DNA of 64,000 nucleotides, from positions 186,001 through 250,000 of the IMG/VR virus record IMGVR_UViG_3300007770_001284; one strand, 5' to 3'. This document shows, piece by piece, positions 1,980-59,434 of the stretch. Made by a program: the position numbers and the translations under genes. Under the pieces are notes generated by a model. The model worked only from the letters and a program-made list of their open reading frames with translations. It was not told the origin of the DNA and made no database searches. Positions within the stretch are counted from its first letter, which is position 1. Every line of letters begins with the position of its first letter.

Positions 1980-1987
1980 CATATAAT
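1959..1987 (+). promoter_or_regulatory. sigma70-type promoter (ATGTAC-N17-TATAAT)
   Basis: Member of a recurrent promoter family; lies upstream of the glutamine synthetase RBS. Confidence 0.55.
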
Positions 1988-2007
1988 TGGTGTCATCAGG
2001 AGATGAT

Positions 2008-3693: not shown

Positions 3694-4167
3694 ATGAATT
3701 CGTGGGTTCCACCAAGGTCGCCGTTTGATCTTTTGCAAGAGCGTTTCTGGCCAGATGGTTGGAAAATTCTTGTTACGTGCTTATTGTTAAACCAAACATC
3801 ACGTAAGCAGGTTGAACCGATGATTGAAAGGTTTTTCCAGCGCTATCCTTCCCCAGAAGTGCTAGCACACGCTGATCAAGAAGAATTGTATCATTACATC
3901 AAGGCGCTTGGATTAGCAAACAAGCGGGTAAAAACGCTTAAACGCTTCAGTCAAGAATTTTTAGAGGGGAATTGGACATCTGCGAAGGACCTCTACGGGT
4001 GCGGAAAGTATGCGGATGATACATACCGCATTTTCATCGTTGGAGATTGGCGAGAAACCTCGCCAAATGATCATGCCTTGAGCGATTATCACGGATGGTT
4101 ACAATCTTCTGATAATTCCTATAATAAAAATCGATGTGTGGAGGAAATATGGACACCGAAGAATTGA
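3694..4167 (+). CDS. MBD4-like HhH-GPD mismatch DNA glycosylase (stand-alone catalytic domain)
   Basis: WVPPRSPFDLLQE..WKILV..LLNQTS..LYGCGKYADDTYRIF..PNDHALSDYHGWL aligns by eye with the MBD4 glycosylase domain (WTPPRSPFNLVQE..LHGIGKYGNDSYRIF..PEDHKLNKYHDWL). Confidence 0.85.
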   Translation: MNSWVPPRSPFDLLQERFWPDGWKILVTCLLLNQTSRKQVEPMIERFFQRYPSPEVLAHADQEELYHYIKALGLANKRVKTLKRFSQEFLEGNWTSAKDLYGCGKYADDTYRIFIVGDWRETSPNDHALSDYHGWLQSSDNSYNKNRCVEEIWTPKN

Positions 4168-4388
4168 AATTAACAGATAACGCGATATCACATATCGCCC
4201 AGCTTTTGCAGATGGCAATCCTAACAGGAACAGACATCATGGACAATCTTCGATCTGCGACGTTTGTTGCATATGAAGGGACAGTGGACATCCATCCGGA
4301 TTACCATGAAACGTTCCAGGAGGGAATTCAGCGAATGGTTGAGGCAGTACAAGACGTCGCCTCTGATGGAGAAACCACGGATGAGTGA
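4149..4388 (+). CDS. Hypothetical protein
   Basis: GGAGG RBS before ATG 4149; overlaps neighbours. Confidence 0.6.
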   Translation: MDTEELKLTDNAISHIAQLLQMAILTGTDIMDNLRSATFVAYEGTVDIHPDYHETFQEGIQRMVEAVQDVASDGETTDE

Positions 4389-4767
4389 GACTGTCAGCAA
4401 TGAATTAGCTGAAATTTTTCGTTTACGTGAAAAGTTTATGCGTACATTACGAGCAAAGAAGCCCACCGAGTATCCGACTTGGCCGATTGATCTTTCTGAT
4501 AAAAAGAACCAGCAACATGTTAGAGATATGGCTCTACGTGGTGTTGAAGAAATGTTTGAGGCATTACAACATTTGAAAAACTGGAAGCCTCATCGAGACA
4601 CAGAATTACAAGAAGTTGATAGGGAAGAATTTTTAGAGGAAATTGTTGATGCATTCAATTACTTTTTCTCTGTGCTGGTCCTTGTCGGGGTTAATTCTGA
4701 TGAGCTTTTTGCTGCGTATTGTCGAAAGGATGAAATCATTCATTCGCGATTGGAGACGGGATATTGA
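4381..4767 (+). CDS. All-alpha NTP pyrophosphatase (dimeric dUTPase / T4 gp56 dCTPase-like)
   Basis: EEMFEA..NWKPH..EEIVD acidic metal-binding motifs. Confidence 0.7.
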   Translation: MSETVSNELAEIFRLREKFMRTLRAKKPTEYPTWPIDLSDKKNQQHVRDMALRGVEEMFEALQHLKNWKPHRDTELQEVDREEFLEEIVDAFNYFFSVLVLVGVNSDELFAAYCRKDEIIHSRLETGY

Positions 4768-6591: not shown

Positions 6592-7515
6592 GTGTTTGAA
6601 ATTTATATTCCATTTTATAACAGCCCGTTTTGTGCTGAGTATCAAGCGAAAACGCTGCGAGCATTTATGCGTGACGAAGATGTTACACTAATCTTTGTTG
6701 ATAACAATATGGGGTATCACCCAGAGGCCTCTTTACGAATTATTGAGATTTGCAAAGAGTATGATATAGAGCTTATTGTTAACAATGATCCGCTCTGTGC
6801 GAAATTTCAAGAGGGAATAGCGCAAGGTCATGTATCTACTTCCGATAAGCTGGGCCATACGCTTAATTTGATTTATGGCGTAGTCCAGCAAAGAAAACCT
6901 GATTATTTTGGGTTTCTCGATCAGGATTGTTTCGCGTTTAAGCCCGTTCAGCTTAAAGAATATCTAGATGAGCACGGCGCGTACGGAAAGGTGGTCCCAA
7001 CACATCCGGACGAAAGTCATGTGACACGATCTGGCGAGCATGTGTGGAATTTACATGTGATGTGTAATTTTTTTAAGCGAGATTTTCTTTCTAACATGAA
7101 CGTTAATTTTATGCCAGGGAGCTGGTGCGAGAGGCTTGGTTATGGCTATGATGTCATACTAGACACGGGAGGAGTTAATTGGTGGACAATGTATAAAGAC
7201 ATGGATCGATCTCAGTATGTGCTACCAGAAGAACATTTTCTGTATTATGATGATATTTCTCTCCTTGACCCCAATAATGATAGTCCTACTAAGACTCTTT
7301 ATGAAGTGCTTGACAACAAGTGGGTGCATATGGTCCACGCCGCAAATTCTGGTGCAGCAGCAGACTATCTTAAGCCAAAAACTTCATATATGAAGGGATT
7401 CCTTGATTTTGCGTTATTGGATGCGGGTGCCGTTGGTGCCAGCCCTCGTCCAGAGTCTGACTTCATACCGTCGTACAGAGACCCGAACCGTCATTTTTCT
7501 TTTGAGGGTTCCTAA
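6592..7515 (+). CDS. Putative GT-A fold glycosyltransferase
   Basis: IYIPFYN start strand, FVDNN, FGFLDQD (DxD), LDTGG. Confidence 0.6.
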   Translation: MFEIYIPFYNSPFCAEYQAKTLRAFMRDEDVTLIFVDNNMGYHPEASLRIIEICKEYDIELIVNNDPLCAKFQEGIAQGHVSTSDKLGHTLNLIYGVVQQRKPDYFGFLDQDCFAFKPVQLKEYLDEHGAYGKVVPTHPDESHVTRSGEHVWNLHVMCNFFKRDFLSNMNVNFMPGSWCERLGYGYDVILDTGGVNWWTMYKDMDRSQYVLPEEHFLYYDDISLLDPNNDSPTKTLYEVLDNKWVHMVHAANSGAAADYLKPKTSYMKGFLDFALLDAGAVGASPRPESDFIPSYRDPNRHFSFEGS

Positions 7516-7540
7516 ACCCACAAGATTAATTTACGTTAAG

Positions 7541-7569
7541 CTGAAAAAACCTCTCATACCCTCTATAAT
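7541..7569 (+). promoter_or_regulatory. sigma70-type promoter for dnaE operon (CTGAAA-N17-TATAAT)
   Basis: Family member; followed by GGAGG and GTG 7589. Confidence 0.55.
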
Positions 7570-7588
7570 ACATCACATTGGAGGTTTT

Positions 7589-10500
7589 GTGCGTAAGACT
7601 AAACTGGTTCCCCCAAATAAGTTCATCTCCCTTCATTCTCATGATGGGTTTTCTACTTTTGATGGGCTGGGCTATCCACAAGAGCACATCGACTTTGTCA
7701 TTGAGAACGGCATGGACGGATGGTGTCTCACAAATCATGGTCATATGAATTCATTTGGGCATGCTTTTCTTCATGCGGAAAAGGTCCAGAAGCGTGGGGG
7801 TACCTTTAGGTTTGTCCCTGGTTGTGAAATGTACGTTCATCCAGACCTTGACGCTTGGAAGCTGGATTACGAAATTCGCCAGGCTGCAAAGAAGGGTGAT
7901 AAAGAAGCGTTGTTCTCATTACGAGAACAGCGGGAAGCAATTACGACTCCGCTCACCGCCGTCACAGACCGCGACGATGAAATTATTGATATCGGTAAAG
8001 AAGAAGCTGGGCTTACCGTAGAAAATGAAGAGGAAACGAAGTCTGGAAAGTTTTACGATCCAGTGAAGCGTCGCCATCATTTGGTAGTTTTGCCCAAGAC
8101 CAGCGAGGGTCTCCAACGTTTGTTCCACCTCGTTAGTAGGGGTTACAGAGAGGGCTTCTATAGGTTCCCGCGTGTTGACTATAGGATGCTAAGGGAAGCT
8201 GCTGAGGGAGGCCATCTAATGGTCTCAACAGCATGTATTGGTGGCCCAATCGCATACGAGGTCTTTAGGCACGCTCAACAGGTCGAGTTTGATGATTTAA
8301 AGCATACGCTGCTTGACGATCCGTCATTTCACCGTAACGTTATGACGGGAGTTGGAAATGCGTATCAAGGGCTTGTTGATGCTGTCGGAATTGATGATGT
8401 ACACCTCGAGCTTCAATTTAACAAACTTCCAGCTCAGCATCTAGTAAATCGGGCGATCATTGAATTTGCAAATAACCAGGGGCTTCAAGACAAGCTGGTT
8501 GTTACAACAGATTCTCATTATGCCCGACCAGAGCATTGGCGTGAACGTGAGCTTTATAAAAAGCTGGGATGGCTAAACTATCGTGAATTCGATCCATCGA
8601 AATTGCCCCAATCAAGAGATGATTTGAAGTGCGAGCTTTATCCTAAGAACGCTCCTCAGGTTTGGGATACGTATCTAGAGTCAACAGACGGAATGGATTT
8701 TTACAATGACCAAGTGGTAAAGGACGCAATCGAGCGTCCGCATACGCTTGTTCACGAGGCTATCCAAGACATCGTTCCCGATCGTACCATGAAGCTTCCT
8801 TCTTATGTTGTACCTGAAGGTATGACAGATGATAAGGCTTTGCTTGAGGCATGTAAGAAGGGTCTTGTTGAGCGAGGGTTGGCAAACGATCCAAAATATA
8901 TCGAGCGAATAAAGCAAGAACTAAAAATCATCAAAGATAAGAATTTTTCTCGATATTTCTTAACAATGGAAGCGATTATTAAGATTGCCAAGAAAGCCAT
9001 GCTTGTCGGACCAGGACGCGGTTCGGCCGCGGGTAGTCTAGTTGCCTATGTTCTTAAGTTGACAGACGTTGACCCGTTCGAATACGATCTTATGTTTGGT
9101 CGTTTTCTAAACCCAAGTCGTGAGGGTGCCCCAGATATCGATACCGATGTTGGTGACCGAGATTTGCTTCTCCAGCTAATGAAAGATGAGTGGGGAGATG
9201 AGAATATTATCCCCATCTCGAATTATAATACTTTCAAGCTTAAGTCCCTTGTGAAGGATATCTCTCGTTTTTATGGAATTCCATTTAACGAGGTAAATAA
9301 GGCTCTGTCAACTGTAGATGAAGATGTGAAGCGTGCAGTGTTTAAGCAGGGGACTGATAAAAACCTGTTCGTTCTACTTTACGAAGATGCTCTAGCTCAT
9401 TCTAAGAAGTTTAGAGCGTTTATCGAGGCGCATCCAGAGGTCGCCGCCCCTATCCAGGTTTTGTTTAAACAGAACAAGGCTCTTGGTCGTCATGCAGGAG
9501 GTTGCATTGTCGCAGAAGATATAGCTGAAAGAATGCCGCTGATCAAAGCTCGAGGTGAGCTCCAGACCCCCTGGGCTGAAGGCATGAACTATAAGCATCT
9601 TGAAACATTTGGCTGGATTAAGTTCGATCTTCTCGGTCTTGAAACGCTACGGATCATTCAAAGAACGATTGAGCTGATTCTTCAAAGAAAAGAGGGTATT
9701 GAGGACCCAACATTCGAGCAGGTCTATGAGTGGTTCAATGCAAATATGGATCCCAAGGTTCTTGATATGGATGACCAGCATGTCTATGAGCATGTTTATG
9801 CAGGTGGTCGTTGGGCCGGTATCTTTCAGCTAGCGGGAAGAGGTGCGCAAAACCTCTTTAAGAAAGCCAAGCCCAAGAGCATTATCGATATTGCTACGCT
9901 GACCTCTATCTATCGTCCAGGCCCACTCACTGCGAAGGTCGATAGATTGTATATCAAGGCCAAGAATAATCCTGAGAAGATTGATTATGGGCATCCACTA
10001 ATCAAAGAAGTACTAGAAGAAACATACGGCTTGATAGTCTTTCAAGAGCAGATCATGAAGCTTTGTTCTGTTGTAGCTGGTTTCCCAGAGGAAGAAACAG
10101 ATACTGTTCGTCGCAGTATTATGAAGCGTAAAGCATCAGAGGCTGCAGAAAGTCTTGCTAAGGCTCGATCTATTAAGGAGCAGTTTGTTGCTGGCTCTGT
10201 TAAGAATGGAGTGGATAGTCAGCTTGCAGATGATTTGTACGAAAAGATTCTCTTCTTCGCAGGATACGGCTTCAATAAGTCTCATGCAGTTTGTTACGCT
10301 ATTGACTCTTACTACTGCGCTTGGCTTTTAACATATTTCGAAGAGGAATGGTTATGCGCTTATCTTGAAGCGATGTCGGGTAATGATAAGAAGCGAGCCA
10401 AGGCTTTCGCTGAGGTTAAGACGCTAGGGTATCGAGTTGTGCCCCTTGATATTAATTACGCGACCAAGGATTGGACAATTCTTGAAGGTAAGAAATTTAT

Positions 10501-11203
10501 GCCTTCTCTTTTGTCTTGTAAGGGTATTGGTGAATCTGCAATCGACGAACTTGTGACTAGTCGACCGTATAAGCATATTGACGACTTGTTGTGGGATGAT
10601 ATCGGAAAGTGGAGGCATTCCAAATTTAACAAGCGTGCTTTGGAGGCGTTAATCAATATTCAAGCATTCGAGTCTATGGATCTTATTGGTGACAACAAGA
10701 CATTTGAAAGCTACAAACAAATGCATGAAGTGTTGATTGGTAAAAATTCTGAAATCAAGAAATGGACAAAGAAGGATCCAGAACGTGGTCGTAGAAACTT
10801 TAACGAGGCGTTGCTTGATACTCAGGGAGCTGGTGTCTGGACACGACGAGAGCGAGTTGAGAATAACGTGCGACATTTCGGTTCATTTAATGCAGCTACA
10901 CTAGTCCCAAGCGAGGTTCAAGAAAAGCTTGCTAAAATGGACATTTTTCCCATTGATGAAATTAATGGTCATGACTTGTATTGGTTCCTCGTGTCAGATG
11001 TGAAGCCGAAGCTAACAAAGAACAAGCGGCCCTATCTACTGGTTACAGCAACTGCATTGTCTGGTCAGACCTATCGGATGTTTTGCTGGAGCTGGGATGG
11101 TGAAACCGAACTGCCGCTTTACAGTCTGTGCGTAGCTGAAGTGAAGAAAAATGATTTTGGATATCAAACTTCTATGAGAAAAATCAAAGTTCTTCAGTTA
11201 TGA
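7589..11203 (+). CDS. dnaE: DNA polymerase III alpha subunit (family C)
   Basis: PHP motifs HSH..DG, TNHG, GCEMY, TDSHY; GPGRGSAAGSLVAY; PDIDTD; KFDLLGL; YGFNKSHA; real start is probably GTG 7589 after GGAGG. Confidence 0.95.
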   Translation: MRKTKLVPPNKFISLHSHDGFSTFDGLGYPQEHIDFVIENGMDGWCLTNHGHMNSFGHAFLHAEKVQKRGGTFRFVPGCEMYVHPDLDAWKLDYEIRQAAKKGDKEALFSLREQREAITTPLTAVTDRDDEIIDIGKEEAGLTVENEEETKSGKFYDPVKRRHHLVVLPKTSEGLQRLFHLVSRGYREGFYRFPRVDYRMLREAAEGGHLMVSTACIGGPIAYEVFRHAQQVEFDDLKHTLLDDPSFHRNVMTGVGNAYQGLVDAVGIDDVHLELQFNKLPAQHLVNRAIIEFANNQGLQDKLVVTTDSHYARPEHWRERELYKKLGWLNYREFDPSKLPQSRDDLKCELYPKNAPQVWDTYLESTDGMDFYNDQVVKDAIERPHTLVHEAIQDIVPDRTMKLPSYVVPEGMTDDKALLEACKKGLVERGLANDPKYIERIKQELKIIKDKNFSRYFLTMEAIIKIAKKAMLVGPGRGSAAGSLVAYVLKLTDVDPFEYDLMFGRFLNPSREGAPDIDTDVGDRDLLLQLMKDEWGDENIIPISNYNTFKLKSLVKDISRFYGIPFNEVNKALSTVDEDVKRAVFKQGTDKNLFVLLYEDALAHSKKFRAFIEAHPEVAAPIQVLFKQNKALGRHAGGCIVAEDIAERMPLIKARGELQTPWAEGMNYKHLETFGWIKFDLLGLETLRIIQRTIELILQRKEGIEDPTFEQVYEWFNANMDPKVLDMDDQHVYEHVYAGGRWAGIFQLAGRGAQNLFKKAKPKSIIDIATLTSIYRPGPLTAKVDRLYIKAKNNPEKIDYGHPLIKEVLEETYGLIVFQEQIMKLCSVVAGFPEEETDTVRRSIMKRKASEAAESLAKARSIKEQFVAGSVKNGVDSQLADDLYEKILFFAGYGFNKSHAVCYAIDSYYCAWLLTYFEEEWLCAYLEAMSGNDKKRAKAFAEVKTLGYRVVPLDINYATKDWTILEGKKFMPSLLSCKGIGESAIDELVTSRPYKHIDDLLWDDIGKWRHSKFNKRALEALINIQAFESMDLIGDNKTFESYKQMHEVLIGKNSEIKKWTKKDPERGRRNFNEALLDTQGAGVWTRRERVENNVRHFGSFNAATLVPSEVQEKLAKMDIFPIDEINGHDLYWFLVSDVKPKLTKNKRPYLLVTATALSGQTYRMFCWSWDGETELPLYSLCVAEVKKNDFGYQTSMRKIKVLQL

Positions 11204-11248
11204 TTAAGGACTAAAGGGTATCGCGCTTAAAGATGAACGGGGTAAAAA

Positions 11249-12280
11249 TTGTTTGCTGGAAAATTTGAAAACTTCACTGAATGTTATCTATCATTGATTG
11301 ATGATGTCTATAATAATTCGACGTATTTATCTGCACCGAGAGGTCAGAAAATTAGGGAAAAACTTGGAGTATCTTTTACGATTGAGAATCCTCGTCACCG
11401 CATCCCCTACGTTGCGGGAAGAAAGTTTAGTGTGACGTATATGGTTGCCGAATTGTTGTGGTATCTTTCTGCAAATAATAAAACTGAATGGATCTCGAAG
11501 TACTCAGCTTTCTGGAAAGATATTAGTGATGATGGTGTGACAGCAAACTCTGCTTACGGTGCTCGGCTTTTTGCCCCTAATGAGAAGATTGCCAATGGTA
11601 GATTTACGCAATGGCAATATGTCGTAAACGAACTAAGAAGAGATCCAGACTCCCGCAGGGCAGTAATGCACTTGAGAATGCCGGCAGACGGAATTGATGC
11701 GAAGTTAGATGTACCATGCACACTTACGCTGCAATTTTTTATTCGAGATAATGAGCTGCATATGATTGTTAACATGCGAAGCTCTGATTTGATTTTTGGA
11801 ATTGCTTATGACATCCCTGCTTTTACATTTTTTCAAGAAATTTTAGCTGGACAATTGGGTGTCGAGCTTGGATCTTATACTCACATGAGCAATTCTCTTC
11901 ACATTTACGAACGTCATTTTGAGATGGTCGAGACGATTTTAAGCGAAAAATGTCTAGCTAAAACGCGCAAGCTAACTGATATTCATGGTCCAATGCCAGC
12001 GATTGACGCTGCTGGGTGCAACCAGCAGGCATTAACATACTGGATTAAGAAGCTAATGACATTTGAGAAAGCACTTTCTGATGCTACAACTCCTCGAGAT
12101 GCCGTTCGTCTGTGGACTGCTTATTTTGCTTATGCTAATAATTCTGATCAAATATGGGCTGACTGGGCTCGGGTCTTAGCTGCACAAAGAGCAAGAAGAC
12201 TTGGCGAGCCAGCAGAAGCAAACGAAATTCAAGCTATCACAGATTTTAGTGGATATTCATTTAATATCAGGAGTCGTTAA
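11249..12280 (+). CDS. Thymidylate synthase paralogue, predicted dCMP hydroxymethylase/hydroxylase
   Basis: SRRA, PCT (catalytic Cys), MRSSDLIFGIAYD with Asp at the position of E. coli ThyA Asn177 (as in T4 gp42), SLHIYERH. Confidence 0.8.
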   Translation: MFAGKFENFTECYLSLIDDVYNNSTYLSAPRGQKIREKLGVSFTIENPRHRIPYVAGRKFSVTYMVAELLWYLSANNKTEWISKYSAFWKDISDDGVTANSAYGARLFAPNEKIANGRFTQWQYVVNELRRDPDSRRAVMHLRMPADGIDAKLDVPCTLTLQFFIRDNELHMIVNMRSSDLIFGIAYDIPAFTFFQEILAGQLGVELGSYTHMSNSLHIYERHFEMVETILSEKCLAKTRKLTDIHGPMPAIDAAGCNQQALTYWIKKLMTFEKALSDATTPRDAVRLWTAYFAYANNSDQIWADWARVLAAQRARRLGEPAEANEIQAITDFSGYSFNIRSR

Positions 12281-13392
12281 TGACGTATCAGTATGATTAT
12301 CTTATTGTCGGTGCTGGAATATTCGGCGCGACGTTTGCTAGAGAAATGACTGACGCGGGCAAAAAGTGCCTTGTCATTGATAAGCGGAAGCACATCGGTG
12401 GTAACGTGTATTCTGAAAAGCGAAATGGCATTGACGTACACGTATATGGTGCCCATATTTTTCATACAAACAATGATCGAATTTGGGAGTACGTAAATCG
12501 ATTTACGACATTCAACAATTACATCAATAAACCGAAGGTACGCTTTGGCGATCGCATTTTTTCGTTTCCCATTAATCTAATGACGCTTCATCAACTATGG
12601 GGTGTTATGGACCCCGCTGAAGCGAAAGCAAAGCTTAATGAAGTGAGGATTCATTGTGAGAATCCTGAAAATTTAGAAGACTGGATCCTTTCCCAGGTTG
12701 GGCGAGAAGTATACGAAACGTTCATCCGTGGTTATACAATGAAGCAATGGCAACGCGACCCGCGGGAACTCCCTTCGTCTATTATCAAGAGACTTCCCAT
12801 TCGTCTTACATTTGATGAAAATTATTTTTTCGACAAGTACCAAGGAATTCCTGTTGACGGCTACACTGCAATGGTTGATAATATGCTGGAAGGAATTGAG
12901 GTGAAGACAGGTATTGATTATTTTGAAAACAGAGCCGTCTTTATTCCTGCTGCAAAGAAGACTGTGTTCACTGGTAAAATTGATGAATTTTTTGGGTTTG
13001 TTCATGGTGAGCTTGAGTATCGCACTTTGCGGTTCGAGCATGAAGAGCTGATGGGTGACTTTCAAGGAAACGCTGTAGTGAACTATACTTCACCAGATGT
13101 CCCCTTTACTCGGATTGTAGAACACAAGCATTTTTTGCCTGAATCGGCTGGAAAACTGGATAACACGATTATCACAAGAGAGTATTCCGCAGAGTATGAC
13201 AGGAGCAAAACGCCATATTATCCTATCGGCGATGCGAAGAATATAGCAATGTATAAGAAGTATTGCGAGATGGCTGAATCGGCAAAGGATGTCATTTTCG
13301 GGGGCCGGCTAGCAGAGTACAAATACTACGATATGCACCAAGTTATCGGTTCAGCACTTGTAAAAGCGAAAAGAGAACTTGAAAATAAATGA
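12280..13392 (+). CDS. glf: UDP-galactopyranose mutase
   Basis: IVGAGIFG, HIGGN, YGAHIFHT, YFxDKYQGIP, TRIVEHKHF, PYYP, GRLAEYKYYDMHQ. Confidence 0.95.
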   Translation: MTYQYDYLIVGAGIFGATFAREMTDAGKKCLVIDKRKHIGGNVYSEKRNGIDVHVYGAHIFHTNNDRIWEYVNRFTTFNNYINKPKVRFGDRIFSFPINLMTLHQLWGVMDPAEAKAKLNEVRIHCENPENLEDWILSQVGREVYETFIRGYTMKQWQRDPRELPSSIIKRLPIRLTFDENYFFDKYQGIPVDGYTAMVDNMLEGIEVKTGIDYFENRAVFIPAAKKTVFTGKIDEFFGFVHGELEYRTLRFEHEELMGDFQGNAVVNYTSPDVPFTRIVEHKHFLPESAGKLDNTIITREYSAEYDRSKTPYYPIGDAKNIAMYKKYCEMAESAKDVIFGGRLAEYKYYDMHQVIGSALVKAKRELENK

Positions 13393-13407
13393 AGATTTGG
13401 CTATAAT
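13379..13407 (+). promoter_or_regulatory. sigma70-type promoter (TTGAAA-N17-TATAAT)
   Basis: Near consensus; GGAG RBS follows. Confidence 0.65.
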
Positions 13408-13430
13408 AAAATAGCAAATTTGGAGAATAG

Positions 13431-14483
13431 ATGAGAGTTTTGTATAGTTTTTGGGGGTTTATTACTCCGCTTGAAAAAAATAGTATTGTAAATACACCTG
13501 ATGGTGAGCGTGGGAACAGGGTGGACTTTGTTACCGAGCTTATGAAGCGTGGCCACGTACCGATTCAACTTCAAAAGATGCGGGATATCGAGCGATATCC
13601 GGGTGTTGAATATGATGACGTAGGGTTTCCCGATGGTGATATTCTTTATGTCGAATGGCGTTGGCCCACTTGGAAGAACAGCGGCGATGACATTTTCGAG
13701 TCTGATTATACACGCCAGTGTAAGGTTCTTGACTATTATCATGATAAAGGAATACCCATCATTATTCATGACGGTGATTTGAAGATGACCCCTGAAGAAG
13801 AGCTCCGCTGGCCGAATGCAGTTCTAGCTGATGCGTGCGTGAACTCGCGACAGCAAACGAGGGAGCGTATTACCATTCCGTGGTGCAATTATATGAAACG
13901 CTATCTTGACCCTGTCGAGTATTCCTACAATTACACGTACGTTGGGAACAATTATGAGAGAGACGATCAATTTCAGAAGTATTACATAAGTTCAAGTCGC
14001 TCGCTTCGAGATCGAGGAATTCAAACGTCTATTTACGGTAATTGGTTACAAAAGTCTCCAGAGCGAAAAGACCCAAAAGAATTGCTGCAGGGAACTCCCT
14101 ATGTTGCCTTTGGCCCACGCTTGGCGTACAAAGATATTTTCGGAGTCTTGAATTCTTCTATCACTGTTACCCATATCACAAAAGACGCGTATACGCCGTA
14201 TGGTAATATTACGGGGAGATTTTTTGAAGCGATCAAAAGCAACGTACCAGCGTTAGTCCCAATAGAATTTAAGCACGCTCTTCCTGTTGGACTAAATGGT
14301 CAACTTGTGGTGGAATCAACTCGTGATGTAATAAGCAAAGTAAACTGGCTTTCATCGTTGAATGCCGAGCAAAGAAAAGCACTAGTAGACGAGCAGGAAG
14401 AGGCTCTTCGAACAGTGATTGATCCCAGACCAGAATACAGGGTAGATCTTCTTGAGCATATTTTGGGAGATTACCACGGATGA
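13431..14483 (+). CDS. GT-B fold glycosyltransferase, possibly DNA/nucleotide-modifying (beta-glucosyltransferase-like)
   Basis: YTYVGNNYER, IYGNW, ITGRFFEAI C-terminal GT-B motifs; context between glf and dNMP kinase. Confidence 0.65.
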   Translation: MRVLYSFWGFITPLEKNSIVNTPDGERGNRVDFVTELMKRGHVPIQLQKMRDIERYPGVEYDDVGFPDGDILYVEWRWPTWKNSGDDIFESDYTRQCKVLDYYHDKGIPIIIHDGDLKMTPEEELRWPNAVLADACVNSRQQTRERITIPWCNYMKRYLDPVEYSYNYTYVGNNYERDDQFQKYYISSSRSLRDRGIQTSIYGNWLQKSPERKDPKELLQGTPYVAFGPRLAYKDIFGVLNSSITVTHITKDAYTPYGNITGRFFEAIKSNVPALVPIEFKHALPVGLNGQLVVESTRDVISKVNWLSSLNAEQRKALVDEQEEALRTVIDPRPEYRVDLLEHILGDYHG

Positions 14484-15034
14484 AGGTAGCATTCATTGGA
14501 CCCGACATGACAGGAAAGTCAAATATTGCTGAAGAACTGTCTCGTCAGACAGACGTTCCTGTGTTCAAAAATTCCAGTGAATGGAAAACGCAACTTGATA
14601 GTCCAGATTATTTTCTTAATCTACTCAAATATGGTGGCCCATTTTTAATGGACTTTATTCGCCAAACAGGCGTATCAGTTATTTTAGACCGTTTTTATCC
14701 GTGTGAGTATGTCTACGCAGAAGCATTCGAGCGAGAGACAGATATGAATGCAATTTTGTGGATGGACGAGAATTTTTCTGAAGTAGGTGGGAAGTTTATC
14801 ATATGTTTGCGGAAAGACTACTCTGGTCTGGTCGATGATCAATATCCTGACCAATTACCACCTGAAATGTTGAAAAAGTTAGACATTTATTATCGTAAGT
14901 TTGCTGAGCGTACAAGTTGTGATTATCTGATTTTAGAGACAGATGACATGGACTTGAACAAGCAGGTAAAAGAGATTAAAATATTTTTAGGAATTAGAGA
15001 AATGGAAGCGGAGGATTTTTGTGTATACTCGTAA
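14480..15034 (+). CDS. Deoxynucleoside monophosphate (thymidylate-type) kinase
   Basis: P-loop GPDMTGKS; VILDRF. Confidence 0.75.
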   Translation: MKVAFIGPDMTGKSNIAEELSRQTDVPVFKNSSEWKTQLDSPDYFLNLLKYGGPFLMDFIRQTGVSVILDRFYPCEYVYAEAFERETDMNAILWMDENFSEVGGKFIICLRKDYSGLVDDQYPDQLPPEMLKKLDIYYRKFAERTSCDYLILETDDMDLNKQVKEIKIFLGIREMEAEDFCVYS

Positions 15035-16025
15035 AGCGTTAGTTACAGGGTGCTGTGGATTTATCGGCGGTCATCTTACGAAGATGTTAGTTGAGCAAGG
15101 GTGGGATGTAACTGGTGTCGACGATTTGTCAAATGGCGACCCCTCTGTATTAGACGGTATAGATATTAGGTGTATCCCACCTGCTCTTTTAGTGGCTTAC
15201 GAAACACAGGCCGTCGATGCTAGTAAGACGCTGGTTATTACTGGTGATTTTGCTCATGAATATGTTCTTATGAAAATTGCTGAAGGTGAATTTGATGTAA
15301 TTTTCCATCTGGCTGCCAATCCGCGTGTGGAGTTTTCTGTTAAGAATCCCGCATCGACTACCCATACAAACGTTCAAAAAACAATTGAATTAATGACAGC
15401 AGCTACCGGAAAAATTGATCGCTTTGTTTTTGCATCATCTTCGTCCAGCTATGGCAATACCGACCAATTTCCAACAAGAGAATCTTCTCCCACAAATCCA
15501 GAGTCACCTTACGGACTACAGAAGCTTGTCGTGGAACAATTTGGTGAATTGTACAACCGATTGTACAGTATGGATTTTGTTGCACTTCGGTTTTTCAATG
15601 TGTACGGCCCTGGCCAGGTGGGAGACTCTCCTTATTCAACTGCAATCGCTGCGTGGTGTACACGTCTTAAGAAAAATGAGCCCCTTCGAAGTGATGGAGA
15701 CGGAGAACAACGGCGTGATATGGTGTATGTAAATGATGTTGCAAGTGCTATGGTGACAGCCGCTGATCACCCCGATTCGTTAGGTTACGCAATGTATAAT
15801 GTTGCAACAGGCGTAGCTGTTACTAACAATGAAATTCTTAAGACACTTAAAGAGTATTTTCCTGAGATGGTTATCAATCATGCTCCCGCTCGCCCAGGCG
15901 ACGTAAAATTTACCTTGGGTTCTATAGATAAAATTAATGAGGAGCTCGGATGGATTCCCCGAAAGGAGTTTTGGGCTGGGCTCAGAAGCACGTTAAAGTG
16001 GTGGGGCTTATTGGACGATGAATAG
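15021..16025 (+). CDS. NAD-dependent nucleotide-sugar epimerase/dehydratase (GalE/WbpP-like)
   Basis: TGCCGFIG, HLAA, ASSSSSYG, SPYGLQK (YxxxK), LRFFNVYGP, DGEQRRD. Confidence 0.9.
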   Translation: MYTRKALVTGCCGFIGGHLTKMLVEQGWDVTGVDDLSNGDPSVLDGIDIRCIPPALLVAYETQAVDASKTLVITGDFAHEYVLMKIAEGEFDVIFHLAANPRVEFSVKNPASTTHTNVQKTIELMTAATGKIDRFVFASSSSSYGNTDQFPTRESSPTNPESPYGLQKLVVEQFGELYNRLYSMDFVALRFFNVYGPGQVGDSPYSTAIAAWCTRLKKNEPLRSDGDGEQRRDMVYVNDVASAMVTAADHPDSLGYAMYNVATGVAVTNNEILKTLKEYFPEMVINHAPARPGDVKFTLGSIDKINEELGWIPRKEFWAGLRSTLKWWGLLDDE

Positions 16026-16449
16026 AAACGCATGGACCAGCAAATCGGTGACAGTAGAAATGCCATGGGGTATAGAGACTCGCTGGAGCGCTGTCCCCAC
16101 AATTACTGGAAAAAAGCTTGAAATTTATTCTGGTTTATGTACAAGCTTAAAATTTCATAAACAAAAGAATGAAGTTTTGTTTGTTGCATCTGGGGAAGTG
16201 ACTGTTATTTTTGCTTGCGAGCGACATTTTGAAGACCCAATTCAGTATCCATCGTCAAAAGAAGTTTTAGGTCCAGGTGGTATGCTGAATGTCCAAGCAG
16301 GGTGCCCTTATCGGGTGTGTGCAAATAAAGATTCTGTAGTATATGAAATTTCGGATGGAAGTAGTGAGAACAGTGTCCGGCTTGAGGACGAATATGGAAG
16401 AGCAATCGACACAATTGACGAGTTTCAGTTTATTTATCCAAAGGACTAA
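16018..16449 (+). CDS. Cupin, mannose-6-phosphate isomerase C-terminal-like
   Basis: PWG..SLKFHKQKNE..VRLEDEYGR. Confidence 0.65.
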   Translation: MNRNAWTSKSVTVEMPWGIETRWSAVPTITGKKLEIYSGLCTSLKFHKQKNEVLFVASGEVTVIFACERHFEDPIQYPSSKEVLGPGGMLNVQAGCPYRVCANKDSVVYEISDGSSENSVRLEDEYGRAIDTIDEFQFIYPKD

Positions 16450-16472: not shown

Positions 16473-17312
16473 ATGAGCTCGATCGACCCAAATTCAGTAG
16501 ATGTAGTGATTTACCACGCTGATTGCACTGACGGTTACGGGGCTGCGTATTCAGCATGGAAGCTGTTGGGAAAACGTGCCGAGTTTTATCCGTGTAAGCA
16601 CGGTAATCCCCCCCCAAAAGTAAAGGGAAAGAACGTTGTTATTTTAGACTTCTCGTTTACGAATGCAGTTACAAAAAAGATGATAAAGTCTGCAAAAAAC
16701 CTCATCGTGATTGACCACCATAAATCTGCAATGGTAGAATTACATGATATAACAAATACACATTTTGACATGACTAAGTCGGGTGCAATGCTGGCTTGGG
16801 AATTTTTTCATCCTGGAAAAGATGCTCCCAAGTTTATTCAATATATTCAAGATCGTGATCTTTGGAAGTGGGAGCTCCCATACTCAAGGGAGTTCGCAGC
16901 AGCGTTTGATATGGTCCCCTTTGAGTTTGAGGAATTTGAAAAGTTTGAAGATGATTCGGTGTTTGATGACGCTGTTAAACGCGGTTCGTATATACTTGCT
17001 TATTCTAAGACAGTTGTAAAGAAGGTTTGCGAGAAAGCTGAGCCAAGAAAGTTTGAAGGGAAGGATGTTCTTGTTGTGAACGCTTCTCACTGGATGTCAG
17101 AAATCGGAGCAAGACTTTCACCAGATTGTGATTTTGCATTGATTTGGTACTGGGATCATGAAGATAAGGTTACGAAGGTCAGCTTACGTGCATTTCACGA
17201 TTCTGTTGACGTATCTGAAATTTCGAAAAAGTTTGGTGGCGGTGGTCACAAAAAAGCAGCAGGATTTACGCTTCCTAAGGAGACTCACATTGAAGAACTC
17301 TTTGACACTTGA
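16473..17312 (+). CDS. DHH/DHHA1 phosphoesterase (nanoRNase-like)
   Basis: YHADCTDG, IDHH, DRDLW, SLR, FGGGGHKKAAGF. Confidence 0.9.
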   Translation: MSSIDPNSVDVVIYHADCTDGYGAAYSAWKLLGKRAEFYPCKHGNPPPKVKGKNVVILDFSFTNAVTKKMIKSAKNLIVIDHHKSAMVELHDITNTHFDMTKSGAMLAWEFFHPGKDAPKFIQYIQDRDLWKWELPYSREFAAAFDMVPFEFEEFEKFEDDSVFDDAVKRGSYILAYSKTVVKKVCEKAEPRKFEGKDVLVVNASHWMSEIGARLSPDCDFALIWYWDHEDKVTKVSLRAFHDSVDVSEISKKFGGGGHKKAAGFTLPKETHIEELFDT

Positions 17313-17886
17313 TAGAACGCCAAAGTTTGATATTGTTTATTTAGATCCGCCATGGGACTACAAAGGCCAGCTACAACATAGTAAACCTGGAATGGGTGAT
17401 ACAGGTGGGGCTCGCAAGCATTATGGTACGCTCAAACTAAAACAGCTTAAGCAGTTTCCAATGCAGGAGCTTCTTAACGAAGACTCGCTTGTCTTTATGT
17501 GGGTAACAAACCCACACCTCGATCAGGGCATTGAGCTGCTTAAGAGCTGGGGGCTGAAATATTCTACAGTCGCCTTTGTGTGGAACAAGATGCGGGTTAA
17601 TCCTGGGTTTTATACCATGTCGCAGTGCGAGCTTTGCCTTGTTGGAAAAAATGGCAAGATTCCTCGACCTCGAGGTGCCAGAAACGTGCGACAATATCTA
17701 GAGCACCTCCGTGAAGAGCATAGCAAAAAGCCGGATGAAGTTAGGGCTCGCATTGAGCAGATGTTTCCAGACCAGACGAAGGTTGAACTGTTTGCTCGCC
17801 ACCAGTTACCTGGATGGTCAGTTTGGGGAGATGAAGTCGAAAGCTGTGACAGTCTTAAAGGGTACTTGAATGAGCTCGGATGGTAG
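17302..17886 (+). CDS. MT-A70 family adenine methyltransferase
   Basis: FDIVYLDPPW, FMWVT, CELCLVG, HSKKP, VELFAR, GWSVWGDE; start probably TTG 17302. Confidence 0.9.
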   Translation: MTLDRTPKFDIVYLDPPWDYKGQLQHSKPGMGDTGGARKHYGTLKLKQLKQFPMQELLNEDSLVFMWVTNPHLDQGIELLKSWGLKYSTVAFVWNKMRVNPGFYTMSQCELCLVGKNGKIPRPRGARNVRQYLEHLREEHSKKPDEVRARIEQMFPDQTKVELFARHQLPGWSVWGDEVESCDSLKGYLNELGW

Positions 17887-18298
17887 ACCGCCATGGGATG
17901 AAATCTGGATGGGGTTTGCTCATTCAATAGCTCGTCGTTCCTATGATCCGCGACATCAGGTTGGTGCTGTTGTTGTTACGAAAGAAAATACACAAGTGTT
18001 AGCTGTTGGGTATAACGGGAATTATACAGGCGGACCCAATGAGGCAGAGTCAGAAGTTCCGGGTGAGTCTGGAATGATTCATGCTGAAATTAACGCGCTG
18101 CTTAAATGTGATTACAATATTCTTGCGGAAAAGATAATGTACGTTACACTAAGTCCGTGTCGAATGTGCGCAAAAGCGATGGTAAATGGTGGGATTAGCG
18201 AAGTCATTTATAACGAGCAGTATCGTGATATTTCTGGGCTGGATCTATTGAGGGCCGCTGGAGTAAAAGTAAGGCGCTATTCCTATAAGAAATACTAG
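17870..18298 (+). CDS. dCMP deaminase
   Basis: RPPWD, QVGA, GYNG, HAEINA, SPCRMC. Confidence 0.9.
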   Translation: MSSDGRPPWDEIWMGFAHSIARRSYDPRHQVGAVVVTKENTQVLAVGYNGNYTGGPNEAESEVPGESGMIHAEINALLKCDYNILAEKIMYVTLSPCRMCAKAMVNGGISEVIYNEQYRDISGLDLLRAAGVKVRRYSYKKY

Positions 18299-18315: not shown

Positions 18316-18346
18316 GTCTAGTGCTTTGTTTGCCGGAGTTGTTCTT

Positions 18347-32410: not shown

Positions 32411-32579
32411 GATTTTGGTAGAAATGCGCGCAAAAGGATTGATATCTGAGACTGAGATTGTCTATAAAGAGGGTGATCTTTATGTCGCAAAGGATGTTGT
32501 GACAAATTCAAAAAGAATTATTGAGTATGGAGGCCCAGTCCGTGAGGGCCGCGGCGGTAAGAGGCTGCTCAAAGGATGA
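32385..32579 (+). CDS. Small hypothetical protein
   Basis: Overlapping operon member ending RLLKG; not GroES-like. Confidence 0.5.
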   Translation: MEQGTLPPEILVEMRAKGLISETEIVYKEGDLYVAKDVVTNSKRIIEYGGPVREGRGGKRLLKG

Positions 32580-58418: not shown

Positions 58419-58425
58419 CTTAAAA

Positions 58426-59049: not shown

Positions 59050-59071
59050 ATTTATCTTCAAGGGAGAAACA

Positions 59072-59263: not shown

Positions 59264-59275
59264 GAGTGAAGAAAA

Positions 59276-59422: not shown

Positions 59423-59434
59423 TTGCCTAATTTG

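What the first reader, a model, noticed from the sequence alone, without database searches (positions are those of the whole stretch)
6592..16449. Putative new DNA hypermodification: galactofuranosyl (or other furanosyl) modified cytosine
Seen: dnaE is followed by a thymidylate synthase paralogue with Asp in the dUMP/dCMP specificity position (RSSDLIFGIAYD). That gene is coupled by TAATG to a complete UDP-galactopyranose mutase, followed by a GT-B glycosyltransferase, a dNMP kinase, a GalE-like epimerase and a sugar-isomerase cupin. A second, GT-A glycosyltransferase precedes dnaE. Known: T4 gp42 (Asp179) makes hm-dCMP that is later glucosylated; RB69-type phages arabinosylate modified cytosine; Glf converts UDP-Galp to UDP-Galf and is normally a cell-wall/LPS gene. 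Inference: UDP-Glc -> UDP-Galp -> UDP-Galf -> Galf on hmC (or 5-hydroxy-C), possibly extended to a disaccharide by the second transferase. I know of no described galactofuranosylated DNA base.
Basis: partly seen in the sequence, partly recalled or inferred. Interest (0 to 1): 0.88.

Follow-up and report, generated by a model that had tools for sequence, protein, structure and literature searches.

The report
Predicted galactofuranosyl-hydroxymethylcytosine DNA module
An uncultured marine jumbo phage carries a tightly packed gene set that most likely replaces cytosine in its DNA by hydroxymethylcytosine and attaches a sugar, probably galactofuranose; this would be a new sugar on a known kind of phage DNA armour.

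Summary
The window belongs to a 255-kb marine virus record with no close cultured relative. The thymidylate-synthase homologue matches T4 gp42 (5hmdCMP synthase) at every diagnostic position. It lacks the D169N mark of the 5-hydroxycytosine synthases described in 2026, so the predicted base is hmC, not 5-hydroxy-C. Glf passes the UDP-galactopyranose mutase equivalog cut-off. The unnamed 350-aa ORF folds as a GT-B whose best structural match is T4 beta-glucosyltransferase.

In 53 related marine loci, TS, GT-B, kinase and 4-epimerase form a conserved core. Glf was inserted into that core at least twice, and it does not track the phages' separate glycan gene clusters.

The likeliest product is therefore Galf-hmC (confidence about 0.5), and a glycosylated hmC of some kind is more likely still (about 0.8). 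The GT-A is sporadic and not linked to Glf. The cupin lacks the metal ligands of the sugar isomerases it resembles.

The novelty claim is weakened. Rhizobium phage RL38JI has galactose on 5-hydroxycytosine, and a phage Glf was proposed to supply UDP-Galf for it (NAR 2026). Cultured Aeromonas T4-like phages also combine Glf with an hmC-type synthase and could serve as a test system. No chemistry was shown here.

The parts
4264..4767 (+). All-alpha NTP pyrophosphohydrolase-like protein; candidate dCTPase that would keep dCTP out of the pool
   Evidence: Weak Pfam hits: dUTPase_2 2.3e-5 and PRA-PH 0.0035. Homologues lie upstream of the module in most Glf-bearing and several Glf-less loci. No PDB sequence match.
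6592..7515 (+). Probable GT-A (GT2-like) glycosyltransferase; sporadic accessory gene
   Evidence: Pfam GT2 E 0.0033, below its cut-off. Family alignment A3 has invariant D37, N39 and DQD (D110, D112). 4 of 12 family members hit PF00535 weakly. Atlas look-alikes are GT2-like. Present only in L017, L018, L033 and L002 among 53 loci.
7403..11203 (+). DnaE-type replicative polymerase (context gene and anchor of the module); the real start is probably downstream of 7403
   Evidence: Homologues in related loci carry PHP, DNA_pol3_alpha, finger and HHH_6 domains. At most 29% identity to cultured phage DnaE.
11249..12280 (+). Thymidylate-synthase homologue with the dCMP hydroxymethylase (5hmdCMP synthase) signature and a C-terminal extension of about 110 aa
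   Evidence: PF00303 1.6e-35. Closest solved structure is MilA CMP hydroxymethylase, 5.6e-43. W80, D143, C146, T147, D169, G173 and D177 are identical to T4 gp42 and differ from RB69 gp48 and RL38J1 gp216. The same signature occurs in the 42 other distinct homologues of the related loci, with one divergent exception, L065.
12280..13392 (+). UDP-galactopyranose mutase (Glf)
   Evidence: TIGR00031 equivalog, 367.2 bits against a cut-off of 303.75. PF03275 1.3e-76. 2.8e-126 to E. coli UGM 1i8t; the substrate and FAD motifs are conserved; His and Lys stand where C. jejuni UNGM has R59 and R168.
13431..14483 (+). GT-B glycosyltransferase; candidate DNA hmC glycosyltransferase
   Evidence: AF2 pLDDT 92.9, pTM 0.90. 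Best VIA match is T4 beta-glucosyltransferase 1qkj: Z 23.2, 306 residues aligned, model residues 1-343. Foldseek TM 0.67. 182 homologues, some carrying PF13524. Present in all 53 related loci.
14480..15034 (+). P-loop nucleotide kinase-like protein (presumed hm-dCMP kinase)
   Evidence: phrog_761 'thymidylate kinase' 5.3e-6. AAA_28 weak. The only PDB hit is YorR 3kb2/2axp, E 0.28; this is the same top structural hit reported for the cluster kinase DLP3_078 in PMC13326640. Present in 52 of 53 loci.
15021..16025 (+). NAD-dependent UDP-hexose (or HexNAc/HexA) 4-epimerase
   Evidence: PF01370 1.1e-52. Best NCBIfam hit is GalE, 150.6 bits, below the 262.3 cut-off. The closest solved proteins are named UDP-glucose 4-epimerase, WbgU and WbpP. 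The Ser/Tyr/Lys triad is kept, there is no dehydratase Asp-Glu, and Thr stands at the GalE Y299 gatekeeper.
16018..16449 (+). Small cupin related to the PMI type II C-terminal domain, without its metal ligands; role unknown
   Evidence: AF2 pLDDT 91.8; generic cupin matches. Atlas look-alikes carry MannoseP_isomer, Cupin_2 or Lyx_isomer. The His/Gln metal ligands are not conserved in alignment A2. Present in 18 of 20 Glf loci and 8 of 33 others.
16473..17312 (+). DHH/DHHA1 phosphoesterase, conserved next to the module
   Evidence: PF02272 1e-8 and PF01368 2.8e-6. phrog_4771 1.1e-78. Present in 33 loci.
17158..17886 (+). MT-A70 family DNA adenine methyltransferase (a second, independent DNA modification); the real start is probably near 17300
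   Evidence: PF05063 4.6e-26. phrog_359 1.6e-63.
17870..18298 (+). dCMP deaminase
   Evidence: PF00383 1.6e-21. Present in 46 of 53 loci.

Best explanation
This is a cytosine-hypermodification module of an uncultured marine jumbo phage.

Inferred pathway:
1. A candidate dCTPase and the DHH phosphoesterase help supply dCMP and deplete dCTP.
2. The TS homologue converts dCMP to 5-hydroxymethyl-dCMP, using methylene-tetrahydrofolate and water as T4 gp42 does.
3. The adjacent kinase, together with host NDP kinase, raises it to hm-dCTP.
4. The DnaE-type polymerase incorporates it in place of C.
5. In parallel, the 4-epimerase turns host UDP-glucose into UDP-galactopyranose, and Glf contracts the ring to UDP-galactofuranose.
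6. After replication, the GT-B enzyme transfers the sugar to the hydroxymethyl group in DNA, giving galactofuranosyl-hmC that blocks restriction and other DNA-targeting defences.

Shown by computation: the family, signature and fold assignments, the operon-like coupling, the conservation of the module, and the repeated insertion of Glf into it.

Inferred: every enzymatic step, DNA as the acceptor, the furanose ring form, and the anomeric linkage.
For: - TS signature: W80, D143, C146, T147, D169, G173 and D177 match T4 gp42 and not the 5hoC synthases. R126 and S167 stand where CMP-specific MilA has Lys and Ala. The signature holds in the 42 other distinct homologues of the related loci, with one exception, L065.
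- The record holds only one TS homologue and no ThyX.
- Glf passes the equivalog cut-off and is about 57% identical to E. coli UGM, with conserved motifs.
- The GT-B model's best match is the DNA-modifying T4 beta-glucosyltransferase over its whole length (Z 23.2).
- Overlapping stops and starts couple TS to Glf and couple GT-B, kinase, epimerase and cupin to one another.
- TS, GT-B, kinase, epimerase and dCMP deaminase next to dnaE form the core in 46-53 of 53 related loci.
- Glf is present in 20 loci, always inside this core. The GT-B tree requires at least 2 gains: one clade with 100/99 support, plus the distant locus L059.
- Five Glf-less relatives of 201-278 kb have no Glf anywhere in their records.
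- The GT2-rich glycan clusters occur with and without Glf.
- Most Glf-bearing loci have no other recognisable transferase within 10 kb.
- Precedents: 5hmC glycosyltransferases that depend on a partner epimerase (10.1101/2023.12.21.572611), and RL38JI, with galactose on 5hoC and a phage Glf (PMC13326640).
Against: - There is no chemical or sequencing-signal evidence. The public runs are held only as contigs.
- GT-B relatives in Glf-less sister clades (about 61% identical) presumably use a pyranose donor. A switch to a furanose donor is assumed, not shown.
- T4 BGT stands only marginally above generic GT-B matches (Z 23.2 against 22.2 for BshA), at 15% identity.
- The epimerase is below the GalE cut-off and has the small gatekeeper residue typical of HexNAc/HexA epimerases.
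- The genome holds at least 9 other glycosyltransferases, plus Ugd, Gmd and a sulfotransferase, which could also consume UDP-Galf.
- The kinase and dCTPase assignments are weak.
Confidence: 0.5

Rival explanations
1. hmC is glycosylated, but the GT-B attaches a pyranose hexose or derivative made by the epimerase (Gal, GalNAc or GalA), as it presumably does in the Glf-less relatives. UDP-Galf would then be used by another transferase: the GT-A in this phage or an unrecognised one. It would serve as a second, capping sugar.
For: TS, GT-B, kinase and epimerase work without Glf in 33 of 53 loci. The Glf clade's GT-B is still about 61% identical to its Glf-less sister clade. By general knowledge, known Galf transferases are mostly GT-A enzymes, and a GT-A-like gene sits upstream here and in L002. 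RL38JI and the T-even phages build di- and trisaccharides with successive transferases.
Against: Fifteen or more Glf-bearing loci have no GT-A and no other recognisable transferase within 10 kb of the module. Glf is wedged directly between TS and GT-B in one lineage and beside the kinase and GT-B in L059.
Confidence: 0.22
2. The furanose is not galactofuranose. Glf-family mutases also handle UDP-L-arabinopyranose or UDP-GalNAc, so the product could be arabinofuranosyl- or N-acetylgalactofuranosyl-hmC.
For: The epimerase is closest to solved proteins named UDP-glucose 4-epimerase, WbgU and WbpP, which I recall as HexNAc-type 4-epimerases, and it has Thr at the gatekeeper. In L059 a UXS-like decarboxylase (motifs TSTSEIYGD and YDEGKR) precedes Glf, which completes a route from UDP-GlcA through UDP-Xyl and UDP-Arap to UDP-Araf. 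Arabinofuranose is the sugar on the RB69 and DLP3 bases.
Against: This genome has no UXS orthologue and no NTP-transferase. Glf has His and Lys, as in Gal-specific E. coli UGM, where the GalNAc-accepting C. jejuni enzyme has R59 and R168 (the role of these residues is from my memory of Poulin et al. 2014). Glf passes the UDP-Galp mutase equivalog cut-off.
Confidence: 0.1
3. Glf, the epimerase and the cupin feed the phage's separate glycan machinery (virion or host-surface glycans). The DNA carries plain or glucosylated hmC only.
For: Large glycan gene sets lie elsewhere in the record. At 58.8-72 kb: GT2 x4, GT7C-like x2, GT11, an aminotransferase, Ugd and a sulfotransferase. At 83.8-89.3 kb: Gmd, an SDR and 2 GT4. 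Glf is normally a cell-wall or LPS gene.
Against: Those glycan clusters lie more than 100 kb away. GT2 genes are present in all five Glf-less relatives tested, but in only two of five Glf-bearing records, which are fragments. Glf entered the hmC module twice independently. It is translationally coupled to the TS gene.
Confidence: 0.1
4. The TS homologue does not make hm-dCMP. It acts instead on dUMP or CMP, or hydroxylates dCMP, so the base is something else.
For: The closest solved relative is the CMP hydroxymethylase MilA. The record has a dCMP deaminase but no separate ThyA or ThyX, although it is only about 75% complete.
Against: D177 excludes dUMP. R126 and S167 match the deoxy-specific enzymes. 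D169, W80 and G173 exclude the flavin-type 5hoC synthases as defined in PMC13326640.
Confidence: 0.04

Closest known systems
T-even phage hmC glucosylation (T4 gp42, gp1, gp56, alpha- and beta-glucosyltransferase)
   Same: A TS-family dCMP hydroxymethylase with identical diagnostic residues. A nucleotide kinase, a candidate dCTPase and a dCMP deaminase are nearby. The GT-B transferase has T4 BGT as its best structural match.
   Different: The GT-B is not a sequence-family member of T4 BGT (15% identity, no Pfam hit). This phage brings its own sugar-nucleotide tailoring genes (4-epimerase, Glf, cupin), which T4 lacks. It replicates with a DnaE-type polymerase and is unrelated to the Straboviridae.
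Rhizobium phage RL38JI / Pootjesviridae: galactosyl(-glucosyl) 5-hydroxycytosine with a phage Glf (PMC13326640)
   Same: A phage-encoded Glf (45% identical). The transcription order TS, then glycosyltransferase, then kinase. Galactose as the base-proximal sugar, with UDP-Galf proposed as the donor.
   Different: The RL38JI synthase has N169, A80, V173 and E143 (flavin-type, making 5hoC), whereas this one has D169, W80, G173 and D143 (hmC type). The glycosyltransferases are not detectably homologous (hhalign probability 0.1), nor are the kinases. In RL38JI, Glf lies about 60 kb from the TS cluster; here it is inside it.
RB69 / DLP3 arabinofuranosyl-5-hydroxycytosine systems (PMC13326640)
   Same: A furanose sugar on a C5-oxygenated cytosine, and a cluster of TS homologue, Tmk/YorR-like kinase, GT-B transferases and sugar-nucleotide genes.
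   Different: The base differs (5hoC against the hmC predicted here). The sugar route also differs: isomerase, kinase, phosphatase and uridylyltransferase from ribulose-5-P there, against 4-epimerase plus mutase from UDP-hexose here.
Metavirome 5hmC glycosylation clusters with paired GT and sugar epimerase (bioRxiv 10.1101/2023.12.21.572611)
   Same: A glycosyltransferase adjacent to a sugar epimerase on which its activity depends. The products there are Hex-, HexNAc- or HexA-5hmC. The conserved core of the marine loci has the same GT plus epimerase logic.
   Different: There, 5hmC is made on DNA by a methyltransferase plus a TET-like dioxygenase. Here it is made at the nucleotide level by a TS homologue. 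That paper mentions no pyranose-furanose mutase.
Aeromonas T4-like phages of genus Tulanevirus (phiAS4, 25, Aes012, Aes508, AS-gz)
   Same: A Glf homologue (38.5% identical; PF03275 5.9e-54) together with a gp42-like TS that has the hmC-type signature.
   Different: Glf and the TS gene lie far apart. The two proteins of about 350 aa that follow Glf show no profile similarity to this GT-B. I found no paper describing their DNA sugar.

Membership tests
dCMP hydroxymethylase / 5hmdCMP synthase (thymidylate synthase superfamily, T4 gp42 type) | Thymidylate synthase family domain with the catalytic Cys (ThyA C146) | tested here: met
   PF00303 1.6e-35. Cys is aligned with C146.
dCMP hydroxymethylase / 5hmdCMP synthase (thymidylate synthase superfamily, T4 gp42 type) | Asp at ThyA N177 (cytosine rather than uracil) and an acidic residue at L143 (admits water, giving hydroxymethyl rather than methyl) | tested here: met
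   D177 and D143, as in T4 gp42. Criteria as stated in PMC13326640.
dCMP hydroxymethylase / 5hmdCMP synthase (thymidylate synthase superfamily, T4 gp42 type) | Deoxyribonucleotide rather than ribonucleotide substrate (Arg and Ser where MilA has K133 and A176) | tested here: met
   R126 and S167 are kept. The role of the MilA residues is from my memory of Zhao et al. 2016 and was not checked in a paper here.
dCMP hydroxymethylase / 5hmdCMP synthase (thymidylate synthase superfamily, T4 gp42 type) | Product is 5hm-dCMP | not testable with these tools
   Needs expression followed by LC-MS.
5-hydroxy-dCMP synthase (RB69 gp48 / DLP3 gp80 / RL38J1 gp216 type) | Asn at ThyA D169 (the diagnostic D169N) | tested here: not met
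   Asp at 169. W80 and G173 are also kept where the 5hoC enzymes have Ala and Val. Criterion from PMC13326640.
UDP-galactopyranose mutase (Glf, TIGR00031) | Score above the curated equivalog cut-off over the full length | tested here: met
   367.2 bits against 303.75, residues 4-367.
UDP-galactopyranose mutase (Glf, TIGR00031) | FAD-binding GxGxxG and the conserved substrate-cleft motifs of solved UGMs | tested here: met
   GAGIFG, IIKRLPIR, YQGIPVDGY, TRIVEHKHF, PYYPIGD and GGRLAEYKYYDMHQV align with the E. coli UGM 1i8t motifs.
UDP-galactopyranose mutase (Glf, TIGR00031) | Interconverts UDP-Galp and UDP-Galf | not testable with these tools
   Needs an enzyme assay.
T4 beta-glucosyltransferase family (DNA hmC glycosyltransferase, GT63) | Compact two-domain GT-B fold that superposes over the full length | tested here: met
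   VIA Z 23.2, 306 of 351 residues, rmsd 3.6. Foldseek TM 0.67.
T4 beta-glucosyltransferase family (DNA hmC glycosyltransferase, GT63) | Sequence-family membership | tested here: not met
   No Pfam family at E <= 0.01. 15% identity. No tblastn match in 50,697 phage records. It works like this family, but it is not a member by sequence.
T4 beta-glucosyltransferase family (DNA hmC glycosyltransferase, GT63) | Acceptor is hmC in duplex DNA | not testable with these tools
   Inferred only from gene context.
UDP-glucose 4-epimerase GalE (TIGR01179) | Ser/Tyr/Lys catalytic triad of extended SDR epimerases, without the dehydratase Asp-Glu pair | tested here: met
   SSS...YGLQK aligned to GalE S124, Y149 and K153; no TDE.
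UDP-glucose 4-epimerase GalE (TIGR01179) | Score above the equivalog cut-off | tested here: not met
   150.6 bits against 262.3. Substrate (Glc, GlcNAc or GlcA) is therefore left open.
RL38JI-type galactosyl-cytosine system (Pootjesviridae) | Homologous base-proximal glycosyltransferase (gp215) and cluster kinase (gp214) | tested here: not met
   hhalign probability 0.1. BLASTP E 1.6.
Type II phosphomannose isomerase cupin (PF01050) | Cupin fold with the Gln/His/Glu/His metal site | tested here: inconclusive
   The fold is confirmed and the look-alikes carry PF01050. The ligand positions are Lys, a variable His, Glu and none in alignment A2. No Pfam PF01050 hit.
GT-A glycosyltransferase family 2 | PF00535 above cut-off; DxD motif | tested here: inconclusive
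   17.8 bits against 23.3. 4 of 12 relatives hit weakly. DQD is invariant. The PDB profile search found nothing relevant.

The most novel reading that the evidence does not exclude
Galactofuranosyl-5-hydroxymethylcytosine would be a DNA base not yet described: a hexofuranose on hmC. It would fully replace C in a widespread lineage of uncultured marine jumbo phages. The conserved core of hmC synthase, GT-B, kinase and epimerase would then act as a scaffold on which different sugar-nucleotide tailoring genes are swapped to diversify the DNA sugar. Those genes include Glf, a UXS-like decarboxylase with Glf, a DAO-like flavoprotein with an SDR, and a HAD with a nucleotidyltransferase and GT-A. The same Galf-hmC chemistry may also exist, unnoticed, in cultured Aeromonas T4-like phages.
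Probability: 0.45. Interest if true: 0.7.

Novelty: new variant of a known kind. Interest (0 to 1): 0.55.

Why it matters
Sugar-decorated cytosines are a main phage counter-defence against restriction enzymes, CRISPR and DNA glycosylases, and each new sugar changes which defences still work. The described hexose modifications of hmC that I found give no furanose ring form. The only furanoses reported sit on 5-hydroxycytosine: Araf, shown by NMR, and Galf, which is only proposed.

A Galf-hmC base would add a new chemical class. It would provide a new DNA glycosyltransferase with a rare donor specificity, which could be useful for 5hmC labelling. It would also show that abundant marine phages diversify their DNA sugars by swapping nucleotide-sugar genes around a fixed core.

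The finding also points to cultured Aeromonas phages in which the prediction can be tested directly.

Tried and rejected
1. Idea: Glf co-occurs with the GT-A, so that Galf is the second sugar. Rejected. The GT-A is found only in L017, L018, L033 and L002, while 20 loci have Glf.
2. Orthology of the GT-B and the kinase with RL38J1 gp215 and gp214. None detectable.
3. Similarity of phiAS4 ORF0026 and ORF0027 to the GT-B. None.
4. Megablast of the cluster and tblastn of the GT-B against 50,697 phage records. No match.
5. Profile of the GT-A family against PDB sequences. Only spurious ribosomal protein L24 hits.
6. PDB sequence search for the cupin, the kinase and the candidate dCTPase. Nothing useful.
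7. Fold search for the cupin. Only generic cupins.
8. Atlas search for the clade-specific 455-aa ORF at 18326-19693. No lead.
9. Search for a UXS or a sugar nucleotidyltransferase in this genome, to support an arabinose or other NDP-sugar route. Absent.
10. Public sequencing runs. All holders are stored as contigs only, so there is no base-level or signal-level evidence of modification. Contigs from libraries labelled as metatranscriptomes cover parts of the cluster, but the runs are flagged as probably DNA.
11. Promoter and terminator scan. The counts are not clearly above those of shuffled sequence.
12. The paper on UNGM specificity residues is not in the library, so that point rests on my memory.

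Full report
**Setting.** The window is bases 186001-250000 of a 254,743-base IMG/VR virus record that CheckV rates about 75% complete. G+C is about 43%, and nearly all genes are on the + strand. The phage has no near relative among 50,697 deposited phage genomes. Megablast of the cluster finds nothing, the DnaE-type polymerase is at most 29% identical to cultured phage polymerases, and the 350-aa ORF has no tblastn match at all. The same DNA is held by marine and seawater metagenome runs from several studies. Other features typical of jumbo phages lie in the window: a tmRNA gene, four tRNAs, a GroEL-like chaperonin and a CCA-adding/poly(A) polymerase-like enzyme.

**Observation check.** The TS stop overlaps the Glf start as TAATG at 12278-12282, with AGGAG upstream. 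The GT-B stop overlaps the kinase start as ATGA. The kinase/epimerase and epimerase/cupin pairs also overlap. The only gap in the cluster is 38 nt between Glf and the GT-B, and it holds the best sigma-70-like match of the region. Promoter-like sites are, however, not enriched over shuffled sequence.

**The base: hmC, not 5-hydroxy-C.** A 2026 paper (PMC13326640) showed that some phage TS homologues are flavin-dependent 5-hydroxy-dCMP synthases. They are recognisable by Asn at ThyA position 169, together with N177D and L143E. I aligned the window protein with four references, all taken from public records:
- E. coli ThyA;
- T4 gp42;
- RB69 gp48;
- RL38J1 gp216.

The window protein has W80, D143, C146, T147, D169, G173 and D177. 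This matches T4 gp42 at each position, whereas the two 5hoC synthases have A80, E143, N169 and V173. Its nearest solved relative is the CMP hydroxymethylase MilA (5.6e-43). At the two positions where MilA has Lys and Ala, the window protein has Arg and Ser like the deoxynucleotide enzymes. To my recollection these two positions set MilA's ribo preference. The 42 other distinct homologues from related loci share the signature, with one divergent exception, L065. The record holds no second TS and no ThyX. The predicted product is therefore 5-hydroxymethyl-dCMP.

**The sugar-nucleotide genes.**
- Glf scores 367 bits against the 303.75-bit equivalog cut-off for UDP-galactopyranose mutase. It aligns end to end with E. 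coli UGM (2.8e-126), and the FAD and substrate motifs are conserved. It has His and Lys where the GalNAc-accepting C. jejuni enzyme has Arg59 and Arg168 (the meaning of these two residues is from memory, because the paper is not in the library).
- The SDR is an epimerase, not a dehydratase. The Ser/Tyr/Lys triad is present and the Asp-Glu pair is absent.
- Its substrate is less certain. It scores below the GalE cut-off. Its closest solved relatives include proteins named UDP-glucose 4-epimerase, WbgU and WbpP, which I recall as HexNAc-type 4-epimerases. The GalE Y299 gatekeeper is Thr.
- The cupin is a confident cupin fold. Its motifs recall the C-terminal domain of type II phosphomannose isomerases, and its Atlas look-alikes carry that family. 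The metal-ligand positions are not conserved in 16 homologues, so its role is open.

**The transferases.**
- The 350-aa ORF has 182 metagenomic homologues, a few of which carry PF13524.
- An AlphaFold2 model built on 42 of them is confident (pLDDT 92.9) and is a GT-B.
- T4 beta-glucosyltransferase, the classical DNA hmC glucosyltransferase, is the best structural match over the whole length (Z 23.2; TM 0.67). It stands only slightly above generic GT4-type enzymes, and identity is 15%. The protein therefore works like T4 BGT on present evidence but is not a sequence member of that family.
- The upstream 307-aa ORF has GT-A hallmarks: an invariant DQD motif, weak PF00535 hits and GT2-like look-alikes. 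It stays a probable assignment only.

**Comparative genomics.** I collected 53 loci that encode GT-B homologues and scored gene presence.
- The conserved core, placed next to dnaE, has these counts out of 53 loci: GT-B 53, kinase 52, epimerase 50, TS 49, dCMP deaminase 46. The DHH phosphoesterase is present in 33.
- This core matches the 'GT plus partner epimerase' logic shown experimentally for TET-made 5hmC (10.1101/2023.12.21.572611). Here it is joined to a nucleotide-level hydroxymethylase.
- Glf occurs in 20 loci and always inside the core.
- On a maximum-likelihood GT-B tree, the Glf-bearing loci form one clade (100/99 support) plus the distant locus L059, so at least two gains or losses are needed.
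- Five Glf-less relatives of 201-278 kb have no Glf anywhere in their records.
- My own idea that Glf travels with the GT-A was refuted. The GT-A is limited to copies of this phage and to L002.
- Other lineages carry other tailoring genes in the same slot. L059 and L016 have a UXS-like decarboxylase. L016 also has a DAO-like flavoprotein with a short-chain dehydrogenase. L002 has a HAD with a nucleotidyltransferase. This pattern suggests that the DNA sugar is being diversified on a fixed hmC scaffold.

**The main rival sink for UDP-Galf.** The record also holds two glycan gene sets far from the window:
- one with GT2, GT7C-like and GT11 transferases, an aminotransferase, Ugd and a sulfotransferase;
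- one with Gmd, an SDR and two GT4 enzymes.

These could also consume UDP-Galf. However, GT2 genes were found in all five Glf-less relatives tested and in only two of five Glf-bearing records, so Glf does not track them. It tracks the hmC module.

**Verdict on mechanism.** The best-supported reading has three parts.
- Base: dCMP is converted to hm-dCMP by the TS homologue, phosphorylated, and incorporated by the phage polymerase.
- Sugar donor: host UDP-Glc is epimerised to UDP-Galp, and Glf contracts it to UDP-Galf.
- Transfer: the GT-B attaches the sugar to hmC in DNA.

I put about 0.8 on 'glycosylated hmC' and about 0.5 on Galf as the sugar the GT-B transfers. The rivals are:
- a pyranose first sugar, with Galf added by another enzyme;
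- another furanose (Araf or GalfNAc);
- use of UDP-Galf for non-DNA glycans;
- a different TS product.

No chemical evidence is available. The public runs are stored as contigs and cannot show modification.

**Comparison with what is known, and novelty.**
- The scheme is that of T4, extended by phage-encoded sugar-nucleotide tailoring.
- The nearest precedent for the sugar is Rhizobium phage RL38JI. Its DNA carries galactose (followed by glucose) ether-linked to 5-hydroxycytosine, and PMC13326640 proposes that its own Glf makes UDP-Galf.
- The present system differs from RL38JI in three ways. The base is hmC-type rather than 5hoC-type. The glycosyltransferase and kinase are not homologous. Glf lies inside the cluster.
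- Full-text searches found no paper that links galactofuranose to hmC.
- It is therefore a new variant of a known kind.

**A by-product.** Cultured Aeromonas T4-like phages of the genus Tulanevirus (phiAS4, 25, AS-gz and others) encode both a Glf homologue and a gp42 with the hmC-type signature. They are a ready experimental system for the same prediction.

Noticed in passing
L070 (Aeromonas phage phiAS4, NC_014635.1: 14224-17496) and L073: Cultured Aeromonas T4-like phages (Tulanevirus) carry a Glf homologue followed by two unknown proteins of about 350 aa. They also have a gp42-like TS with the hmC-type signature (W80, D143, D169, G173, D177). I found no paper on their DNA sugar. They may carry a Galf-type hmC modification.
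   Followed up: partly
L059:7352-12948: A distant relative has the order UXS-like decarboxylase, Glf, kinase, GT-B, epimerase, TS. This is a complete paper route from UDP-GlcA through UDP-Xyl and UDP-Arap to UDP-Araf, so this lineage may put arabinofuranose on hmC.
   Followed up: partly
L016:3104-10020: Another relative carries a UXS-like SDR before dnaE. In the slot where Glf sits elsewhere, it has a DAO-like FAD protein and a short-chain dehydrogenase. This is probably yet another sugar variant.
   Followed up: no
L002:1836-3159: The 289-kb relative has a HAD hydrolase and a sugar nucleotidyltransferase inserted just before its GT-A homologue. This suggests that there the GT-A uses a phage-made NDP-sugar. 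Both genes are absent from this genome.
   Followed up: partly
G000:C1:58800-72000 and 83800-89300 (L066, L067; outside the window): Large glycan-biosynthesis gene sets: four GT2, two GT7C-like, a GT11 fucosyltransferase-like gene, an aminotransferase, UDP-glucose dehydrogenase, a sulfotransferase, GDP-mannose 4,6-dehydratase, an SDR and two GT4. The phage probably builds a sulfated or fucosylated glycan of unknown target.
   Followed up: partly
window 42165-42509 (-): A phage-encoded tmRNA gene with tag peptide ANNNNHFEYALAA. It lies next to a weak tubulin/FtsZ-like ORF (40860-42092, - strand). This is the only stretch of the window with reversed GC skew.
   Followed up: no
window 58341-63408: Four tRNA genes: Met-CAT, Lys-TTT, Asn-GTT and Arg-TCT.
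   Followed up: no
window 17158-17886: An MT-A70 family adenine methyltransferase sits directly after the DHH gene. It is present in most of the Glf clade but in none of the Glf-less loci within 10 kb, so the DNA probably also carries m6A.
   Followed up: no
window 1987-3015, 3694-4167, 32576-34159, 45296-46933, 53141-55264: A glutamine synthetase-like protein, an HhH-GPD DNA glycosylase just upstream of the modification module, a GroEL-like chaperonin, a CCA-adding/poly(A) polymerase-like enzyme, and a HAD_SAK_1 'RNA repair' domain protein.
   Followed up: no
L014:1-5291: In the 258-kb relative, the DnaE polymerase gene is split by intein-like insertions (Intein_splicing domains between the DNA_pol3 pieces).
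   Followed up: no
window 18326-19693: A 455-aa ORF with no family or look-alike. It is found in 16 of 20 Glf loci and in none of the others. A variable gene of unrelated sequence occupies the same slot in other lineages.
   Followed up: partly
window 11249-16449 in runs X11 and X20: Contigs from libraries labelled as metatranscriptomes cover parts of TS, Glf, GT-B, kinase, epimerase and cupin at 95-99% likeness. The runs are flagged as probably DNA, so this is not proof of transcription.
   Followed up: partly
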